DNA of 46,750 nucleotides from Octopus sinensis (GCF_006345805.1 NW_021831931.1:1-46750); one strand, 5' to 3'; shown: positions 6,305 to 36,346, counted from the stretch's first letter. Notes: generated by a model from the letters alone, not told the origin. Translations and numbers: made by a program.

Positions 6305-6708
6305 TTTTACTCTCTTTTACTTGTTTCAGTCATTTGACTGCGGCCATGCTGGAGCACCGCCTTTAATCGAGCAACTCGATCCCGGGACTTATTCTTTTGT
6401 AAGCCCAGTACTTATTCTATCGGTCACCTGTGCCGAAACGCTAAGTAACGGGGACATAAACACACCAGCATCGGTTGTCAAGCAATGCTAGGGGGACAAA
6501 CACAAACACACACACACTCATATATATATATACATATATACGACGGGCTTCTTTCAGTTTCCGTCTACCAAATCCACTCACAAGGCTTTGGTCGGCCCGA
6601 GGCTATAGTAGAAGACACTTGCCCAAGGTGCCACGCAGTGGGACTGAACCCGGAGCAAGCAATGTGGTTGGTAAACAAGCTACTTACCACACAGCCTCTC
6701 CTGCGCCT
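6305..6708 (-). mobile_element. SINE family 1, full length
   Basis: Minus-strand tRNA-like head (GGCTGTGTGG A-box-like, GGTTCAGTCCC B-box-like), central (CA)/(TA) tract, tail GGCGGTGCTCCAGCATGGCCGCAGTCAAATGACTGAAACAAGTAAAAG. Confidence 0.9.
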
Positions 6709-6911
6709 AACATTGAACTGTGTGTATCGTAATGAAATTTTTTATGGTTTAAGTCAGTACGAAAAAGGCAACATCCCATCATATGTCTAATGTGGCTACG
6801 AGACATGTGAAAACGGGGTCTGTGGAGAAACAGCAAATCGCAGGGCAGAGATGAAAATTTGTGTTGTGAAGACAGAAATATTGGTCCTTTCAAGAGAGAA
6901 TCTCCAATGTA

Positions 6912-7147
6912 TTACTCTCTTTTACTCTTTTACTTGTTTCAGTCATTTGACTGTGGCCATGCTGGAGCACCGCCTTTAGTCGGGCAAAACGACCCCAGGA
7001 CTTATTCTTTGTAAGCCTAGCACTTATTCTATCTGTCCCTTATGCTGCACCGTTAAGTTACGGGGACGTAAACACACCAACATCTGTTGTCAAGCTATGT
7101 TGGGGAGACAAACACAGGCACACAAGCATATACACACACACACGTAC

Positions 7148-7178
<31 letters not shown>

Positions 7179-7180
7179 CA

Positions 7181-7215
<35 letters not shown>

Positions 7216-7377
7216 GCGACGAGCTTCTTTCAGTTTCCATCTACCAAATCCACTCACAGGTTTTGGTTGGCCCGAGGCTATAGTAGAAGACACTTGTCCA
7301 AGGTGCCAAGCTGTGGGACTGAACCCGGAACCATGTGGTTCGTAAGCAAGCTATACCACACAGCCACTCCGACGCTT
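6912..7377 (-). mobile_element. SINE family 1, full length, central (CATA)n expanded
   Basis: Collinear with the 6305-6708 copy. Confidence 0.9.
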
Positions 7378-7432
7378 ATGCAATATTCTGCATATTACTG
7401 CAACATCATTGACAGACATGGAGAAGTTTAAG

Positions 7433-7985
7433 TATTGGGTTGGCACAGTCCCACAATATGCACAACATCATTTTACGGGGATGAAGATCTGGTTTCACGC
7501 GCGGTGTCGCTCGTTTACAAGATCTAAGCCATCCTTATGATGTTTCATATTAATATTCAGGCACCATTTTTCGTAGCCAGTAACGATTCGGTAAAGAAAT
7601 CGTTGCTTGTGTCTATGAGTTGAGCGGTGACGAGCAAGCAAACCAGCGGAGATTGCGGCTCGTTGATTTTTGTTGCTGTCACTTAAAACATGCGGGACCC
7701 ATGCTCCATACTTCTGAACCTTTCCCATCGAGTGAAGATGCTTCTCTGTAGCAGTGTGGGAGCATTCCATTTTCTCTGCCTGTTCCCTTGTCGTTTGACG
7801 AGAATTTTCGTGCGAAAGTTGGTTTAATCACTCTTCATCGAACTCAACTGAACGGCCAGAACGAGGTGCGTTTTTGAGGTCAAAATATCTATTTTTGAAA
7901 TTGGCATACCAATCACGAGCGGTTCTTTCAGGTATGGCACCCTCTCTATACACGGCACAAATGTCGCGAGCAGATTTTGCATCCT

Positions 7986-8064: not shown

Positions 8065-8202
8065 ACTTTATTAAAAAGTTGAACATATCACAAAAGCTTT
8101 CTCAGTTGTGATATTTTTGCTGCTTTTTAATAAGGCATATTACTCCACCTCTGGTATTCGAGTACTATTTATTCCAGCTTTTCGCATTTATGTGTTTACT
8201 CT

Positions 8203-8205
<3 letters not shown>
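8065..8205 (+). mobile_element. Collapsed family B pLTR module, hammerhead deleted
   Basis: Matches 499-530 and 610-703; short fold-back ATATCACAA/TTGTGATAT; (TA)n on both sides. Confidence 0.7.
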
Positions 8206-8258
<53 letters not shown>

Positions 8259-8420
8259 TTTATTCCGAAAAAACTTTTCCTCTCCCGAAATGCAATTCGT
8301 AAAAGTTTGCCATTCATCCGGATATAGTATATATAAACTCACCCATGTGCTTCGTTCATGTTGATCAGTTAGCTGATCGGCTTAAGCGAGGCAGGGTCGT
8401 TGTTTATTTATAGTATATTC

Positions 8421-8468
8421 AGGCCTGCTGATGATTACGTAAGTATGAAATCACTGTGATACAGGTCT
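8421..8468 (+). ncRNA. Type I hammerhead ribozyme, array copy 1 (predicted cleavage after 8461)
   Basis: AGGCCTG-CTGATGA-T-TAC(GTAA)GTA-T-GAAA-TCAC(T)GTGA-TA|CAGGTCT; 7 bp stem I with one G.U, canonical core, AUA cleavage triplet. Confidence 0.85.
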
Positions 8469-8901
8469 ATATATTTTTAAATGTCTTTCTTTGAAAAATT
8501 GCATTCGGTGGGATTAGTAATATTTTTGGTAGAAATGACTGATTGTCCCTCTTAGCGTATGGCGTGTATGTAGAATGCCTCCTGGCATGTATGTATAATG
8601 CCCTCTATATATAAATTAATATGTTCAATAAGAAATAATTATTTTCGAAATTTTTTCTCTTATGAGGTTTTTACGCTATCTACCTGACAATTTCTTGTTA
8701 AGTTTTCCTTATTAAGTAGTTGTCCTTAATTGCTAAATTTTTATTCCGAAAAAACTTTTCCTCTCCCGAAATGCAATTCGTAAAAGTTTGCCATTCATCC
8801 GGATATAGTATATATAAACTCACCCATGTGCTTCGTTCATGTTGATCAGTTAGCTGATCGGCTTAAGCGAGGCAGGGTCGTTGTTTATTTATAGTATATT
8901 C

Positions 8902-8949
8902 AGGCCTGCTGATGATTACGTAAGTATGAAATCACTGTGATACAGGTCT
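8902..8949 (+). ncRNA. Type I hammerhead ribozyme, array copy 2 (cleavage after 8942)
   Basis: Identical 48 nt to copy 1. Confidence 0.85.
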
Positions 8950-9384
8950 ATATATTTTTAAATGTCTTTCTTTGAAAAATTGCATTCGGTGGGATTAGTA
9001 ATATTTTTGGTAGAAATAGAATGACTGATTGTCCCTCTTAGCGTATGGCGTGTATGTAGAATGCCTCCTGGCATGTATGTATAATGCCCTCTATATATAA
9101 ATTAATATGTTCAATAAGAAATAATTATTTTCGAAATTGTTTCTCTTATGAGGTTTTTACGCTATCTACCTGACAATTTCTTGTTAAGTTTCCTTATTAA
9201 GTAGTTGTCCTTATTGCTAAATTTTTATTCCGAAAAAACTTTTCCTCTCCGAAATGCAATTCGTAAAAGTTTGCCATTCATCCGGATATAGTATATATAA
9301 ACTCACCCATGTGCTTCGTTCATGTTGATCAGTTAGCTGATCGGCTTAAGCGAGGCAGGGTCGTTGTTTATTTATAGTATATTC

Positions 9385-9432
9385 AGGCCTGCTGATGATT
9401 ACGTAAGTATGAAATCACTGTGATACAGGTCT
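9385..9432 (+). ncRNA. Type I hammerhead ribozyme, array copy 3 (cleavage after 9425)
   Basis: Identical 48 nt to copy 1. Confidence 0.85.
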
Positions 9433-9857
9433 ATATTTTTAAATGTCTTTTTTGAAAAATTGCATTCGGTGGGATTAGTAATATTTTTGGTAGAAATGAC
9501 TGATGATTGTCCCTCTTAGCGTATGGCGTGTGTAGTAGAATGCCTCCTGGTGTATGTATTAATGCCTCTATATATAAATTAATATGTTCAATAAGAAATA
9601 ATATTTTCGAAATTTTTCTCTTATGAGGTTTTACGCTATCTACCTGACAATTTCTTGTTAAGTTTCCTTATTAAGTAGTTGTCCTAATTGCTAAATTTTT
9701 ATTCCGAAAAAACTTTTCCTCTCCCGAAATGCAATTCGTAAAAGTTTGCCATTCATCCGGATATAGTATATATAAACTCACCCATGTGCTTCGTTCATGT
9801 TGATCAGTTAGTGATCGGCTTAAGCGAGGCAGGGTCGTGTTTATTTATAGTATATTC

Positions 9858-9905
9858 AGGCCTGCTGATGATTACGTAAGTATGAAATCACTGTGATACA
9901 GGTCT
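9858..9905 (+). ncRNA. Type I hammerhead ribozyme, array copy 4 (cleavage after 9898)
   Basis: Identical 48 nt to copy 1. Confidence 0.85.
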
Positions 9906-10336
9906 ATATATTTTTAAATGTCTTTCTTTGAAAAATTGCATTCGGTGGGATTAGTAATATTTTTGGTAGAAATGACTGATTGTCCCTCTTAGCGTATGGC
10001 GTGTATGTAGAATGCCTCCTGGCATGTATGTATAATGCCCTCTATATATAAATTAAATGTTCAATAAGAAATAATTATTTTCGAAATTTTTCTTTATGAG
10101 GTTTTTACGCTATCTACCTGACAATTTCTTGTTAAGTTTTCCTTATTAAGTAGTTGTCCTTAATTGCTAAATTTTTATTCCGAAAAAACTTTTCTCTCCC
10201 GAAATGCAATTCGTAAAAGTTTGCCATTCATCCGGATATAGTATATATAAACTCACCCATGTGCTTCGTTCATGTTGATCAGTTAGCTGATCGGCGCTTA
10301 AGCGAGGCAAGGTCGTTGTTTATTTATAGTATATTC

Positions 10337-10384
10337 AGGCCTGCTGATGATTACGTAAGTATGAAATCACTGTGATACAGGTCT
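10337..10384 (+). ncRNA. Type I hammerhead ribozyme, array copy 5 (cleavage after 10377)
   Basis: Identical 48 nt to copy 1. Confidence 0.85.
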
Positions 10385-10531
10385 ATATATTTTTAAATGT
10401 CTTTCTTTGAAAAATTGCATTCGGTGGGATTAGTAATATTTTGTAGAAATGAGAAAACTGATTGTCCCTCTTAGCGTATGGCGTGTATGTAGAATGCCTC
10501 CTGGCATGTATGTATAATGCCCTCTATATAT

Positions 10532-10564
<33 letters not shown>

Positions 10565-10598
10565 TATATATACATACATACATACATACATACATACA

Positions 10599-10630
<32 letters not shown>

Positions 10631-11569
10631 CACACACAAACACACACATATATATATATACAATTTGCGTGAATAAAATTTCAATCGATATTTGTTCCAC
10701 CACAAGTTAAAAGACACTTCCTTACTTCTTTGTTTCCCACGCCGTCGGAACTATCATGTCTGATGGTTTTCCCGTATGGTACCTTTAACGAATGATACTA
10801 TTTTACACAAACTGCGATATGAAATAAATACGTAGCAATATTATTATTATTAGAATTACTGAATCATTTGTAGCTGTTGATAAGATACTATAAACTGAAC
10901 AGTCACCAGCTGAGATCCTATCAATAGCCATATACCATGTCATTGACAAACAACTTCATCCCCTCTCCTAAATACCACAATGAATTGCCGGCACTTTACA
11001 GTAAGCATTTGTAGTATTGAAGAAGTAAAGAGATTCTCGTGTGCTTGAAGCTATGGGCTACCATATTCCTGTGGTTAAAGCGTCGGGGAAGGGTGAGTTC
11101 CGCTATGTTGACTTTCCTACTTTCCTACAATGAAAGAAGATATGTTGAATGGTTCTGACCTCTGCTCAATGAAACATGTGATTTATTGCAACCACCTGCA
11201 TGTTAAATCAATAAGCGCATCGTTAAACGAGAATAGGCGCCATCTTGTACGTAAGTGTCTCTAGTAATAAAGAAGAGTCACTAGCGTGTTAGTAGACTGA
11301 TCAGAAAATATGGAAACTGGCGCCATATCGGAACCGAATGGAAGAAAGCAACAGCTGCTATCTCGTAGCGAGAGGCAAGAAGCATGTGTTTAGTAATGAC
11401 CACGCACTGCTTCTTACCATATTCCTGTTCAATTCTTCTATCCTGTCGTCTCTATCATTGTTCGACTTTGTCTTCTTATCTTTTCGTTCATTTCCTTCCT
11501 CAGAGGCTTCATCTTGTTCCATTTATATTCACACACTTTTGACATTTTTAAACAATGTAATCGCGGTGG

Positions 11570-25069: not shown

Positions 25070-25660
25070 TTGTTTCATATTTCTTTATTGCCCACAATGG
25101 GCTAAACGTAGAGGGGGACAAACAAGGACAGACAAAGGGATTAAGTCGATTACATGGACCCCAGTTCGTAACTGGTACTTAATTTATCGACCTCGAATGA
25201 TTGAAAGGCAAAGTCGACCTCGGAGGAATTTGAACTCAGAACGTAACGGTAGACGAAATACCTTTTTCTTTACTACCCACAAGGGGCTAAACACAGAGGG
25301 GACAAACGAGGACAGACAAACGGATTAAGTCGATTATATCGACCCCAGTGCGTAACTGGTAGTTATTTAATCGACCCCGAAAGGATGAAAGGCAAAGACA
25401 ACCTCGGCGGAATTTGAACTCGGAACGTAACGGCAGACGAAATACCTCTTTCTTTACTACCCACAAGGGGCTAAACATAGAGGGGACAAACAAGGACAGA
25501 CATAGGTATTAAGTCGATTACATCGATCCCAGTGCGTAACTGGTACTTAATTTATCAACCACGAAAGGATGAAAGGCAAAGTCGACCTCGGCGGAATTTG
25601 AACTCAGAACGTAGTGGCAGACAAAATACGGCTACGCATTTCGCCCGGCGTGCTAACGTT
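25070..25660 (-). mobile_element. Head-to-tail trimer of SINE family 2
   Basis: ~183 bp units with junctions near 25260 and 25443; only the outermost unit has the CGCCCGGCGTGCTAACG head. Confidence 0.85.
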
Positions 25661-26590: not shown

Positions 26591-26788
26591 AAAAAAAGGA
26601 AGAGTGTCATTGTTATCAAATGAACGATATTTCGACATCTCGTGTGTCTTCCACAGGTTCAAAAAATAAGCATTTCAAGCTATTTCATTTTGGTAATATT
26701 TATAGGATTGAGGTTACTCCTCCAGGAGGTATACAAGCAAAAAAAAAAAGAAAAGAAAAAAAAAGGAAAGTACCTTAATAATAATAAT

Positions 26789-27805
26789 AGTTCGGTATGG
26801 CGCTGGAATCCTGAAATGGACAGAGGGGGAGCTAAAGCAAACTGACAGGAAGTCAAGAAAGCTCCTATTCATGCCTGGAGACATCACCTACGTGCTGACA
26901 CTAATCACCTTATACATGAAAGGATCAAATGGAGGAAGAGGATTGATAAGTGTGGAAGACAGCGTGCGTATCGAATTCGGGAGCTAAATGGGATTCCTAG
27001 TCCAAAGTAAGGGATCCTAGCTAGTGACAATTAGGAACGAGGGAGTATTGAAAGCAGAGAAAAATAGGAAAAACAAGGGAAAAAGTACAAAAGAATTACG
27101 CAAGAAGGGACTACACAATCAATTCCATGCAGCCGCAATAAAAGTTGCTAGAAAAACTAGGTGGAATTGGCTGATGAAAGGAACCCTAAAAAAAAAGAGA
27201 CCGAGCGCAAGACCAAGCAATGGCCACGAAATGGAGGGTCAACCTTTCTAAGGAGCAAGTGCCTCCGCTGTGCCGCATCTGTAATAGAGTGGTTGAAAGT
27301 ATTGCCAAAATCACAAACGAATGTCCTAGACTTGCCCAAAGCCACTACAAGCTGCGGTGACATGATTAGGTAGCGAAAGTGCTATATTGGAAACCGTGCG
27401 AAAAGTTGGGCTAGAGAGAGGCAAGACGTGGTATGAGCGCAAATCGCAGAGTAGTGGAGTCGGAGACTAGCAAAATCCTCTCGGATTTCCCACTCTAAAC
27501 AGATCAGGTGCTAGAGCATAACAGATTGGACACAGTGGTGGTCAACAACATACACCTCATGTGCTATATTGTTGATATTGCACGCTCCTCTGACCCACGC
27601 GAAAAATGTTGATAATTACAGCCCTCTTAAGTACGAAATAGCCCGGATACGGATAATGAAGAAGGTGAAGATAGTGCCAATTGTCGTTGGCTCCTCGGGA
27701 ATAGTATCAGAAGGTATCAAGAGGAATATCAAGGAAACTTGAATAGAGTGCCGGGTTATAAAAATGTTGCCTCCTTGGCACGGCCAGAACAATAAAGTAT
27801 TAGGT
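26789..27805 (+). pseudogene. R4/Dong-like (RLE-type) non-LTR retrotransposon, decayed C-terminal ORF
   Basis: Across frames: RYGAGILKWTEGELKQTDRKSRKLL, GGRGLISVED (RT thumb), LHNQF..WNWL, SKCLRC (zinc knuckle remnant), WYE, TDQVLEHNRLDTVVV..CYIVDIA (restriction-like endonuclease PD-D/ExK), KVKIVPIVVG. Confidence 0.85.
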
Positions 27806-27854
27806 AAGAAAATTACTATTTGTAAATCTCACAGCGCGAGATATTCAGCAACAG

Positions 27855-28075
27855 TACTTTGGAGTAAAGATTGTTTGCCAACATATAACATGGCGGTCCT
27901 GGTTCAGGACAAATATTGCCGTAATTTAGCCCCAGGAGACATCGTTTTCAGCTGGCTGTACGATTGTGTCATATAGCCAGTTCGAGACGATGTCTCGTGG
28001 GTCTAAATTACAGCAACGTTCATCCTAAACCAGGATTGCCATGTTATGTTAGCAAATAATCTTTACTCTAAAGTA
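27855..28075. mobile_element. Fully palindromic TA-flanked MITE (~221 bp)
   Basis: Arms 27855-27960 / 27972-28075, roughly 80% complementary; ends TA-CTTTGGAGTAAAGA and TCTTTACTCTAAAG-TA. Confidence 0.8.
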
Positions 28076-28099
28076 TTAGGTAGCTGAAAAGAAGAAATA

Positions 28100-28353
28100 G
28101 CATGGTACCGTACGCTTGCAAGACTCCAGGAGCTCCAACAAAACCTGTGATAAAAAGAAATAAACTCAGAAAATTTATAAATTTGCCCATTAAAATCGAA
28201 GAAATGTGGCATCTCAAGACAGTCACAATGTTTGTGATTGTAGATTGTAGAAGCACTTGCAAAAAAGGAACTGAAAATTATTTGAGAATGATCCCTGGCT
28301 TATCATCTATGCAAAACATCGTTTTCACATTGAGAAGAGCATTGTCACTGTGA
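28100..28353 (+). pseudogene. R4/Dong-like LINE extreme C-terminal fragment
   Basis: KFINLPIKIEEMWHLKTVTMFVIV..KKGTENYLRMIPG..LRRALSL*, typical of the post-RLE tail (KYKDLEIEIEKMW..VIVGALG). Confidence 0.7.
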
Positions 28354-28583
28354 AGTTTCTTTCATTTTCGTTTCCTTTTTTCTTTGTTTCTCTCCCCCTT
28401 TTTTCTATCACATAACTTGACTTTGTATATGAACCATCTGGTGAGGTTATTTTAATAGCCTGCTAAAGTATACAGTGAACTTCTTTGCCCTAGGTGTCAG
28501 GAAGACACACGGCAAGAATTGGAAGTAGAATTGATAAAAGAAAAATAAATAATTATGATAATAATAATTGTTGAGAGAAAAGC

Positions 28584-28935
28584 GGCGAGCTGGTAGAAAC
28601 GTTAGCACGCCTGGCGAAATGCTTAGCGGTATTTCGTCTACTGTTACGTTTAAATTCCGCCGAGGTCGACTTTGCCTTTCATCCTTTCGGGGTCGATAAA
28701 TTAAGTACCAGTTACGCACTGGAGTCGATATAACCGACTTAATCCGTCTGTCTGTCCTTGATTGTTTCCTCTGTGTTTAGTCCCTTGTGGGTAGTAATGA
28801 AATAGGTATTTCGTATGTTTTTACGTTCTGAGTTCGTCTGTTTTTACGTTCTGAGGTTTTAAAATTAAGTACCAGTTGCGTACTGGGGTCGATCTAATCG
28901 ACTGGCCCCATCACTCAAAATTTCGGACCTTGTAG
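28584..28935 (+). mobile_element. SINE family 2 plus a partial second tandem unit
   Basis: Full unit to ~28806, junction GAAATAGGTATTTCGT, deleted second unit with the alternative TGGCCCC tail. Confidence 0.85.
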
Positions 28936-31846: not shown

Positions 31847-31984
31847 GACAGGCTTCTTTCAGTTTCCATCTACCAAACCCACTCACAAGGCTTTGGTCGG
31901 ACCGAGGCTATAGTAGAAGACACTTGCCCAAGGTGCCATGCAGTGGTACTGAACCCGAAACCATGTGGTTGGTAAGCAAGCTAC
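31847..31984 (-). mobile_element. SINE family 1 5' half, directly abutting pLTR-A
   Basis: GGCTTCTTTCAGTTTCCATCTACC...GAACCC...GGTAAGCAAGCTAC. Confidence 0.85.
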
Positions 31985-32099
31985 TGCTGTTTACTTATAA
32001 TTCAAGGTGTTTGGAAAGAAGCCATGAAGCTTTACAGTGAAGACAACAAATTATAATAGAAAAGAAGTTAAGCCCTGAAGAAGTTACGTCATTAAAAAT

Positions 32100-35568: not shown

Positions 35569-36346
35569 TATATATATATACACGTATGTGTTTGTGTATG
35601 TTTGTGTGTCTGTGTGTCTGTGTGTCTTTGCATCTGAATTTGTTCTTCACCGCTTGAAAAGTGATGCTTATTTGTTTACGACCCTGTAACTTAGATATTC
35701 CGTAAAAAGACTGACAGATAGGTACCAGAGTTAAAATACTGAAGTCAATTTGTTCGACTTAAATTACAAAGAATTGCCGCTGTCTAATGACTGAAATAAG
35801 TAACAGTTAAATTCTTCAGTGTTTTCGTGTGTTTCTTCTCCTATGAATAACGTCTTAGTTTGAGCTTTCTTTGTTATGATGTTCCTAGAGACGCCAAAAC
35901 TATTACTCATTCGCAATGTCAGTCAAAAATGTCTTCCTTTTCGTTTCCAGCAACCTCTGTCTATTTTTCACATCCCTCAAAAATTCTCAGTAAACTGAAG
36001 ACAATGTTTGTTCCAAGCATCTTCCATATTTTTCTCTGTAACTGGTTTTTTTTTCCATTTAAAAAAAAAATTATTCTCTACTGAGAAAACAGCGCTTTTA
36101 GAATTCTTTTAGCCTAAAGTATATTTCATTTTATCAACTGAACAAATCGCATTGATGACGCAACGCTTTAAATATTGCAATAATGCCTCTGTCCATTGTT
36201 TGCGAAACTGCTGATATGTGGCCGCGTAAACATTACTCTAACCTTTCAAGGAACATATTGTAAACATTTTAGTTACGAACATGTATTATTTACGGTCTGT
36301 AGCGTCTGGCATTAAATTTTCGTCTTAATATATTTAACTTAAATAA

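What the first reader, a model, noticed from the sequence alone, without database searches (positions are those of the whole stretch)
8257..10535. Tandem ~480 bp array with a hammerhead ribozyme in every unit: candidate cephalopod retrozyme / self-cleaving satellite
Seen: five identical 48 nt type I hammerheads (CTGATGA core, GAAA, AUA cleavage triplet, 7 bp stem I AGGCCTG/CAGGTCT), with predicted cut sites at 8461, 8942, 9425, 9898 and 10377, i.e. monomers of 481, 483, 473 and 479 nt. Stem III ATCAC-T-GTGAT is a palindrome. Established: non-LTR retrozymes and ribozyme satellites (newt satellite 2, Schistosoma SMalpha, cricket pDo500) are head-to-tail repeats with one type I HHR per unit. Their transcripts self-cleave, often through dimeric HHRs formed by a palindromic stem III, and give monomeric linear and circular RNAs; Penelope-like elements are their proposed mobilisers. 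Inference: read-through transcription would be processed into ~480 nt monomers or circles. No coding capacity is evident. I do not know of a described octopus family with this unit. Caveat: stem II is weak (3 bp plus GUAA loop, U.U at 10.1/11.1).
Basis: partly seen in the sequence, partly recalled or inferred. Interest (0 to 1): 0.93.

Follow-up and report, generated by a model that had tools for sequence, protein, structure and literature searches.

The report
Hammerhead-ribozyme tandem repeat (animal retrozyme)
A 2.3-kb block of five head-to-tail ~480-bp repeats, each carrying a complete hammerhead self-cleaving RNA motif, looks like a new (probably octopod) member of the known animal "retrozyme" class of non-coding mobile repeats, so it is a good find but not a surprising one.

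Summary
A 481-bp tandem array lies at 8257-10535 (4.8 copies). It holds five identical 48-nt type I hammerhead (HHR) motifs, and the predicted cut sites give monomers of 481, 483, 473 and 479 nt.

The motif is far beyond chance: no equally good hit appeared in 140 Mb of shuffled sequence. A covariance model built only from four experimentally validated retrozyme HHRs (coral, mussel, two axolotl) ranks the five copies as the top hits in the window (16.9 bits, E~0.01).

The unconstrained minimum-energy fold of a two-unit transcript is exactly the classic double hammerhead. The circular monomer is unusually stable (z=-6.5).

The unit is non-coding and AT-rich, and (TA)n lies on both sides, a known target of Penelope-like elements.

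Weak points:
- Rfam's hammerhead models do not detect it, even at E<=10.
- Helix II starts with a U.U mismatch, though the active axolotl HHR_Amex2 has the same feature.
- The copies are near-identical, so there is no covariation.
- No other locus, RNA data or Penelope-like element could be examined.

Verdict: a new member of the non-LTR retrozyme class, of moderate interest. Octopod origin is plausible but unproven.

The parts
8257..10535 (+). Tandem array of 4.8 units of ~481 bp (33% GC): a partial head (8257-8461), four full monomers and a partial tail (10378-10535)
   Evidence: TRF; unit alignment
8421..8468 (+). Type I hammerhead copy 1; predicted cleavage after 8461
   Evidence: Exact 48-mer; descriptor; model R1, 16.9 bits
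8902..8949 (+). Type I hammerhead copy 2; predicted cleavage after 8942
9385..9432 (+). Type I hammerhead copy 3; predicted cleavage after 9425
9858..9905 (+). Type I hammerhead copy 4; predicted cleavage after 9898
10337..10384 (+). Type I hammerhead copy 5; predicted cleavage after 10377
8405..8483 (+). Extended helix I of copy 1. The 7-bp stem I is followed by a 2-nt UC bulge (8419-8420), then 7 more pairs (8412-8418 with 8469-8475) and a further 6 pairs. The bulge is a candidate 'loop 1' for contact with the GUAA loop 2
   Evidence: MFE folds; the tertiary contact is inference only
8462..8942 (+). Predicted excised monomer 1 (481 nt), with circle junction GUGAUA|CAGGUC. Monomers 2-4 are 8943-9425, 9426-9898 and 9899-10377
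   Evidence: Cut-site arithmetic; circular MFE -123.7 kcal/mol, z=-6.5
8205..8255 (.). (TA)25 microsatellite directly upstream of the array; possible insertion target
   Evidence: TRF; sequence
10526..10662 (.). (TA)n then (ATAC)n microsatellite directly downstream of the array; possible other half of the target
   Evidence: TRF; sequence

Best explanation
This is a non-LTR retrozyme: a non-coding, non-autonomous retroelement made of head-to-tail ~480-bp units, each with one type I hammerhead on the + strand.

Proposed mechanism:
1. Transcription through at least two units yields an RNA in which neighbouring hammerheads pair through their near-palindromic helix III (AUCAC-U-GUGAU). This forms a double hammerhead, in which each catalytic core cuts the other copy after A17 of the AUA triplet. 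A single hammerhead with a 4-bp/3-nt-loop helix III may also work, less well.
2. Cleavage releases ~480-nt linear monomers with 5'-OH and 2',3'-cyclic phosphate ends.
3. A host tRNA ligase (RtcB type) closes them into highly base-paired circles.
4. Circles or multimers are copied by the reverse transcriptase of an autonomous Penelope-like element and inserted as tandem copies, here into a (TA)n microsatellite.

Shown here: the array, the complete motif, the predicted folds, the lack of coding capacity and the (TA)n flanks. Inferred from the published family: transcription, cleavage, circularisation and mobilisation.
For: Array and motif:
- Array and five identical complete HHRs.
- All core residues are present: C3-A9, G12-A14, A15.1-U16.1, H17=A (sequence).
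- 0 equal-quality hits in 140 Mb of shuffles.

Comparison with validated ribozymes:
- Model R1 was built only from the coral, mussel and two axolotl HHRs whose cleavage was shown experimentally (sequences from the supplement of PMC7229834).
- R1 gives the five copies as the best hits in the window: full-length, 16.9 bits, E~0.014.
- Helix II has the same layout as the active axolotl HHR_Amex2/Ax353, namely U.U plus 3 bp.
- Stems I and III are longer than in all four validated ribozymes.
- All four validated ribozymes also have a palindromic helix III.

Predicted folds:
- Two motifs cofold into the double hammerhead at -28.3 kcal/mol, against 2 x -10.3 for separate motifs.
- The unconstrained MFE of transcript 8400-8975 is exactly the double hammerhead (-151.6). 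Two enforced single HHRs reach only -141.7.
- The circular monomer has MFE z=-6.5 and -5.1 on the plus strand and -4.3 and -3.3 on the minus strand. This matches the 'highly self-paired' circles of the family.

Other features:
- 33% GC and no ORF or protein hit.
- It meets the operational definition of an active non-LTR retrozyme in 10.64898/2026.07.22.740005: a TRF repeat, a type I HHR in at least 2 consecutive units, and HHR MFE below -5. Unit length and copy number lie inside the reported ranges.
- (TA)n lies on both sides, a preferred target of some Penelope-like elements.
- Penelope-like elements exist in Octopus vulgaris and in the giant squid.
Against: - Rfam release 15 gives no hammerhead match at gathering score or at E<=10 on 2.6 kb or on 101 nt.
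- Position 10.1/11.1 is U.U instead of the usual G-C, and helix II has only 3 pairs.
- As a lone 48-mer, the active fold (-8.3) is 2 kcal/mol less stable than an alternative that pairs core UGAU with AUCA.
- The copies differ almost only by small indels, so there is no covariation and only weak evidence of constraint: 0 of 35 differences fall in the HHRs, P~0.02.
- No second locus was found in the window, in viral or metagenome contigs, or among predicted proteins.
- No Penelope-like reverse transcriptase or GIY-YIG domain was seen among the ten transposon-like frames tested.
- About 6-7% of random sites in this window lie next to a (TA) run, so the flanks are only suggestive.
- R1's E-value is rough and modest.
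- There are no expression data.
Confidence: 0.75

Rival explanations
1. An ordinary young satellite or segmental tandem duplication that contains a hammerhead-like string by chance. No catalysis, and no RNA life cycle.
For: Five identical copies are one event. A looser descriptor gives 0.02 hits per Mb in shuffles, so extrapolation predicts a few motifs of the observed quality per multi-Gb genome. Rfam's hammerhead models do not score it. Helix II is weak.
Against: The chance motif would have to coincide with several independent features: a tandem array; a palindromic helix III that makes the double hammerhead the MFE of a dimer; a GNRA loop 2; a bulged, extended helix I; an unusually stable circular monomer; and the top rank with a model trained on validated retrozyme HHRs.
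Confidence: 0.12
2. A remnant of a Penelope-like element insertion: a run of its pseudo-LTR (pLTR) pieces, which carry hammerheads, left after loss of the coding part. It would not be an independently propagating retrozyme. The array may also have grown by DNA-level unequal exchange.
For: Penelope-like elements insert as partial tandems with HHRs in their pLTRs and often target (TA)n. Retrozymes appear to derive from pLTRs. The array does not begin or end at a cut site.
Against: There is no reverse transcriptase or endonuclease remnant next to the array, and none among the ten transposon-like frames tested. HHRs of Penelope-like elements are described as minimal variants, whereas this one has long helices I and III like the canonical retrozyme HHRs. 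The array holds 4.8 regular units.
Confidence: 0.08
3. The copy number, or the array itself, is an assembly artefact: a single unit or a dimer inflated by the assembler.
For: The differences between copies are mostly 1-5-nt indels of the kind long-read errors produce.
Against: The copies carry distinct differences and the array has unique junctions with both flanks. A collapsed or inflated repeat usually gives identical copies. This would not change what a unit is.
Confidence: 0.04
4. A C/D-box snoRNA-like gene, with UGAUGA as the C box and a terminal stem.
For: Weak Rfam matches to snoZ7 and similar families, at 14.3 bits against a gathering score of 43.
Against: There is no D box (CUGA) before the 3' stem strand. 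Only 34 nt lie between the stem strands. The score is far below threshold.
Confidence: 0.01

Closest known systems
Metazoan non-LTR retrozymes (Cervera & de la Pena 2020, PMC7229834): coral Amil224, mussel Mg353
   Same: Head-to-tail units of a few hundred bp, with one canonical type I HHR per unit, low GC, no ORF/LTR/PBS/PPT, a palindromic helix III and a predicted highly paired circular monomer.
   Different: The unit is 481 bp, against 150-450 bp in that paper. Helix II has U.U and only 3 pairs. Helix III is longer (4 pairs as a hairpin, 5+5 as a dimer) and has an odd-length palindrome, so the dimer helix carries a central U.U. There is no sequence similarity outside the core. No RNA data are available.
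Amphibian satellite 2 / axolotl retrozymes (HHR_Amex1, HHR_Amex2)
   Same: HHR_Amex2 has the same U.U at the base of helix II, a 3-bp helix II and cleavage after A17. Both axolotl motifs work much better as dimers formed through the palindromic helix III.
   Different: Amphibian helix III has 1-2 pairs plus a tetraloop, whereas here the hairpin form has 4 pairs. The units are 330-350 bp and more GC-rich than this one (sequences), with about 10^5 copies. The copy number here is unknown.
Hammerheads in pseudo-LTRs of Penelope-like elements
   Same: Type I topology, tandem arrangement, action as dimers, (TA)n targeting in some clades, and the proposed evolutionary source and mobiliser of retrozymes.
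   Different: Those HHRs are minimal variants inside a coding element. Here the HHR has canonical long helices and there is no ORF.
Schistosoma SMalpha and cricket pDo500 hammerhead repeats
   Same: Animal repeats with one type I HHR per unit that are transcribed and self-cleave (from established knowledge; not tested here).
   Different: No similarity was tested. SMalpha is SINE-like and dispersed.
Plant LTR retrozymes
   Same: Non-coding retroelements that spread through HHR-processed circular RNAs.
   Different: Those have type III HHRs inside LTRs, a PBS/PPT, 4-bp target-site duplications and high GC. None of these features is present here.

Membership tests
Hammerhead ribozyme, type I | Conserved catalytic core CUGANGA ... 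GAAA, an A15.1-U16.1 pair, and H17 not G | tested here: met
   CUGAUGA / GAAA / A-U / A17 in all five copies
Hammerhead ribozyme, type I | Three helices around the core, with helices II and III closed by loops and helix I open | tested here: met
   Stem I is 7 bp, stem II is 3 bp (+U.U) with a GUAA loop, and stem III is 4 bp as a hairpin or 5+5 bp as a dimer
Hammerhead ribozyme, type I | Match to the curated covariance model (Rfam Hammerhead_1 and related families) | tested here: not met
   No hammerhead match at gathering score or at E<=10, even on 101 nt
Hammerhead ribozyme, type I | Match to a model of experimentally validated animal type I HHRs | tested here: met
   Model R1 (coral, mussel, two axolotl) gives the five copies as top hits: full length, 16.9 bits, rough E~0.014. 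The significance is modest.
Hammerhead ribozyme, type I | Covariation supporting the helices | tested here: inconclusive
   The five copies are identical and no other locus was found
Hammerhead ribozyme, type I | Site-specific Mg2+-dependent self-cleavage | not testable with these tools
   Needs in vitro transcription
Non-LTR retrozyme | Tandem head-to-tail repeat with a type I HHR in at least two consecutive units, and HHR MFE below -5 kcal/mol (operational definition, 10.64898/2026.07.22.740005) | tested here: met
   TRF with their parameters; five consecutive HHRs; MFE -10.3
Non-LTR retrozyme | Non-coding, with no LTR/PBS/PPT, and low GC | tested here: met
   Longest frame is 54 aa and there are no protein hits; 33% GC. 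The absence of LTRs rests on the simple tandem structure. PBS and PPT were not searched for specifically.
Non-LTR retrozyme | Monomer predicted to form a stable, highly self-paired circle | tested here: met
   Circular MFE -123.7 kcal/mol, z=-6.5, 64% paired
Non-LTR retrozyme | Multiple dispersed loci in the genome (a mobile family) | not testable with these tools
   The source genome is not available. There is no other copy in the window.
Non-LTR retrozyme | Expressed as linear and circular monomer RNAs | not testable with these tools
   No RNA data
Non-LTR retrozyme | Co-occurrence with autonomous Penelope-like elements | tested here: inconclusive
   None seen among the ten transposon-like frames tested. 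The literature reports them in Octopus vulgaris and the giant squid, but the species of the window is not established.

The most novel reading that the evidence does not exclude
This would be an invertebrate (cephalopod) retrozyme family that Rfam-based annotation cannot see and whose hammerhead is built to act mainly as a double hammerhead. A 10-pair helix III would form between neighbouring units, a mode documented so far mainly for amphibian retrozymes. It would yield unusually large (~480 nt), heavily paired circular RNAs in a lineage known for extensive RNA editing of double-stranded RNA.
Probability: 0.3. Interest if true: 0.5.

Novelty: new member of a known kind. Interest (0 to 1): 0.38.

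Why it matters
If confirmed, it extends hammerhead retrozymes to cephalopods. The most detailed octopus repeat annotation found in the searched papers does not mention ribozymes or retrozymes.

It also shows that covariance-model annotation with Rfam can miss bona fide-looking type I hammerheads that have a U.U at 10.1/11.1 and a long palindromic helix III.

It would provide a compact test case (a 480-nt unit, with the double hammerhead as the predicted ground state of a dimer) for asking whether invertebrate retrozymes also use dimeric cleavage.

It does not open a new kind of biology. The class, its life cycle and its link to Penelope-like elements are already described.

Tried and rejected
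- Rfam at gathering score, and at E<=10 on three region sizes, gave no hammerhead. The only hits were microsatellite-driven miRNA matches and weak snoRNA matches.
- Exact-pattern scans of viral contigs and of metagenome contigs (two patterns) for the HHR found nothing.
- I tried to reach other genomic copies through predicted ORFs. An exact look-up of a unit ORF and a concatenated six-frame query of the unit against 5.8 billion proteins both found nothing.
- Exact look-ups of three other window ORFs, to name the source record, found nothing.
- The contigs carrying the best transposase and RT hits are ocean or environmental metagenome scaffolds and do not name the organism.
- Pfam scans of ten transposon-like frames found nothing significant, so no Penelope-like element was identified.
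- blastn of the unit against the rest of the window gave only low-complexity matches.
- Plain MAFFT misaligned the validated HHRs. I replaced that alignment with an N-padded structural alignment.
- The snoRNA reading was rejected because there is no D box.
- Intra-array conservation was judged too weak to use: P~0.02, and the differences may be read errors.

Full report
**1. Is it there?**

Yes. Tandem Repeats Finder reports a single array at 8257-10535 with period 481, 4.8 copies, 96% matches and 3% indels. The same array is returned with the parameters used by a published retrozyme-detection pipeline.

The 48-nt string AGGCCTGCTGATGATTACGTAAGTATGAAATCACTGTGATACAGGTCT occurs five times without a mismatch, at 8421, 8902, 9385, 9858 and 10337 on the + strand. 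It occurs nowhere else in the window. Counting from the motif start, the scissile bond follows 8461, 8942, 9425, 9898 and 10377. This gives four complete monomers of 481, 483, 473 and 479 nt, plus a 205-nt head and a 158-nt tail.

**2. Is the motif a hammerhead, and is it more than chance?**

Read as RNA, the motif has the following parts:
- Helix I: AGGCCUG/CAGGUCU, 7 pairs with one G.U.
- Core: C3-U-G-A-U-G-A9.
- Helix II: U.U, then U-A, A-U and C-G, closed by GUAA.
- G12-A-A, then the A15.1-U16.1 pair.
- Helix III: AUCAC-U-GUGAU.
- A17 followed by the cut.

Helix I continues after a 2-nt UC bulge for 7 more pairs.

A descriptor I wrote finds only these five sites at normal stringency on either strand. 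It requires the CUGANGA and GAAA core, a U at 16.1, H17 not G, and minimum helix lengths. In 1500 dinucleotide-preserving shuffles of the window (140 Mb of strand) there were 0 hits of the observed quality and 3 at a looser setting. The same descriptor recovers the published cleavage sites of four experimentally validated retrozyme ribozymes.

Two cautions apply. The five copies are one event. By extrapolation, a multi-Gb genome should contain a few chance motifs this good.

**3. The Rfam result**

No hammerhead family matches at gathering score, at E<=10 on 2.6 kb, or on a 101-nt slice. This is a real negative and is recorded as a membership feature not met.

To find out whether it reflects the sequence or the model, I took four retrozyme constructs from the supplement of Cervera & de la Pena 2020 whose cleavage was shown in vitro: coral Amil224, mussel Mg353 and axolotl Ax353 and Ax330. 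I aligned their hammerheads by structure and built a covariance model that contains nothing from this window.

With filters off, the five copies are the best hits in the window. They match the full length of the model, with the helices assigned as above, at 16.9 bits and a rough E of about 0.014. The significance is modest, but the test is independent.

Sequence comparison shows why the motif is unusual but not implausible. Ax353, which carries HHR_Amex2, has exactly the same helix II layout (CUGAUGA-U-GCC...GGC-U-GAAA), with a U.U at its base, and it also cleaves after an A17. It self-cleaves 22% in an hour as a monomer and much better as a dimer. All four validated ribozymes have a palindromic helix III. 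The present motif has longer helices I and III than any of them.

**4. Predicted behaviour**

As an isolated 48-mer, the active fold (-8.3 kcal/mol) loses to an alternative that pairs core UGAU with AUCA (-10.3).

Two motifs cofold into the classic double hammerhead, in which each core is completed by the helix III arm and cleavage site of the other copy. This fold reaches -28.3 kcal/mol, against -20.6 for two separate motifs.

More tellingly, the unconstrained minimum-energy structure of the natural two-unit transcript 8400-8975 (576 nt) is exactly this double hammerhead, with every core nucleotide unpaired. It reaches -151.6 kcal/mol, compared with -141.7 when two single hammerheads are enforced.

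The excised monomer, folded as a circle, reaches -123.7 kcal/mol, against -90.5 +/- 5.1 for shuffles. That is z=-6.5, and z=-5.1 for monomer 4. The minus strand is less extreme, at z=-4.3 and -3.3. Published retrozyme circles are described as stable and highly self-paired.

**5. What the unit is not**

The longest stop-to-stop frame in a dimer of the unit is 54 aa. A concatenated six-frame query found no relative among 5.8 billion predicted proteins. There is no second ribozyme on the minus strand. The rest of the window holds no other fragment of the unit. GC content is 33%, the same as the window.

**6. Copies and constraint**

The copies differ by about 35 events, 22 of them small indels. 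Many look like long-read errors. None falls in the five 48-mers, where 3.7 would be expected (P~0.02). One 2-nt loss lies in the extension of helix I.

This is too weak to claim selection. The array is either very young or homogenised, so it gives no covariation. Near-identical copies are what rolling-circle reverse transcription of one circle would produce, but that is inference.

**7. Context**

The array sits between (TA)25 at 8205-8255 and a (TA)n/(ATAC)n tract starting at 10526. It neither starts nor ends at a cut site.

(TA)n is a preferred target of Naiad elements and is thought to be one for Neptune elements; both are clades of Penelope-like elements. Target-site duplications cannot be read in such sites. 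However, perfect (TA) runs cover 5.6% of this window, and about 7.5% of random positions adjoin one. The flanks are therefore suggestive only.

Ten transposon-like frames gave no Pfam match, so no Penelope-like element is visible here.

**8. Organism**

The window is extremely rich in microsatellites and short interspersed repeats. A mariner fragment at 7498-7827(-) is 91% identical, over a short stretch, to an Octopus bimaculoides Mos1-type transposase. A reverse-transcriptase tail at 39817-40397(-) is 65% identical to an Argonauta hians protein. An octopod source is plausible but not proven. The best unnamed hits come from ocean metagenomes.

**9. Comparison with what is known**

By the operational definition of a 2026 preprint, this is an 'active non-LTR retrozyme'. 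That definition requires a TRF repeat, a type I HHR in at least two consecutive units, and an HHR MFE below -5 kcal/mol. Its 481-bp unit and 4.8 copies lie inside the reported ranges, which are 51-972 bp with most families at seven units or fewer. The unit is slightly longer than the 150-450 bp given in the 2020 paper.

Retrozymes are already documented in a mollusc, the mussel. The giant squid genome paper lists 235 Rfam Hammerhead_1 hits. Octopus vulgaris carries Penelope-like elements, but its detailed repeat annotation mentions no ribozyme or retrozyme. I found no paper describing an octopus retrozyme.

**10. Verdict**

This is a new member of a known kind, of moderate interest.

Its distinguishing points are:
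- It is invisible to Rfam.
- It has the U.U-based helix II otherwise seen in an amphibian family.
- Its helix III makes the double hammerhead the predicted ground state of a dimer.

What remains untested is everything that needs RNA or the rest of the genome: transcription, cleavage, circles, copy number and the mobilising element.

Noticed in passing
window 18214-18271 (-): A second, solitary hammerhead-like motif: AGUCG-CUGAUGA-long helix II-GAAA-UUGCGAU-C|CGGCU. It was picked up by my loose descriptor (0.034 expected per window) and is the next-best hit of model R1 (14.8 bits, E~0.06). It has an A.C at 10.1/11.1 and a 5-bp helix I. The local MFE does not adopt the hammerhead fold (z=0.09), and Rfam is silent. 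It is probably chance or a decayed relic.
   Followed up: partly
window 25080-25629 (+); related pieces near 12362-12526, 18908-19114, 28450-28776, 36337-37003: A 184-bp unit repeated 3 times in tandem (88% matches). It belongs to an interspersed, SINE-like family whose translated frame (…RNWYLIYRPRKDERQSRPRRNLN…) recurs at five or more other places on both strands. ARAGORN finds no tRNA-like gene in the window.
   Followed up: partly
window 6460-6729, 7087-7431, 19280-19465, 31849-32037, 42361-42693, 46145-46399 and others: A second interspersed repeat family, recognisable by the recurring frame …SRRHLPKVP.SGTEPGTMW…. It has at least six copies on both strands, often adjoining (ATAC)n/(CA)n/(TA)n microsatellites.
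   Followed up: no
window 7498-7827 (-): A fragment of a mariner/Mos1-type transposase. The best hits are 85% identical in ocean metagenome scaffolds, and it is 91% identical over a short stretch to an Octopus bimaculoides transposase. The fragment itself has no Pfam hit.
   Followed up: partly
window 39817-40397 (-), possibly also 26700-28350 (+): The C-terminal tail of a non-LTR (LINE) reverse transcriptase, 65% identical to an Argonauta hians protein with an RVT_1 domain. Frames at 26.7-28.4 kb look like another decayed LINE 3' part, but that reading is by eye only and is not confirmed by Pfam.
   Followed up: partly
window 18317-18804: An AT-rich tandem array with nested periods of 35, 59 and 94 bp (AAAATTTTC-type units). 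It lies immediately next to the solitary hammerhead-like motif.
   Followed up: no
window ~18100-18129: A perfect 13-bp inverted repeat with a 4-nt spacer (GTACCATCTGTCA-CTTT-TGACAGATGGTAC). It may be a transposon end or a hairpin signal.
   Followed up: no
whole window; e.g. 10591-10661 (-), 8182-8248 (+): Microsatellite density is very high: 106 TRF rows, and perfect (TA) runs of at least 6 units cover 5.6% of the window. These tracts produce spurious weak Rfam miRNA matches (mir-297, mir-466, mir-1277), all far below gathering score.
   Followed up: yes
window 8566-8606 (and the same place in each unit): Inside the unit there is an imperfect 18-nt direct duplication, TGTATGTAGAATGCCTCC / TGTATGTATAATGCCCTC. 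There are also two TATA-box-like strings (TATATAAA) per unit on the + strand, one about 90 nt upstream of the hammerhead. Whether either acts as a promoter is unknown.
   Followed up: no
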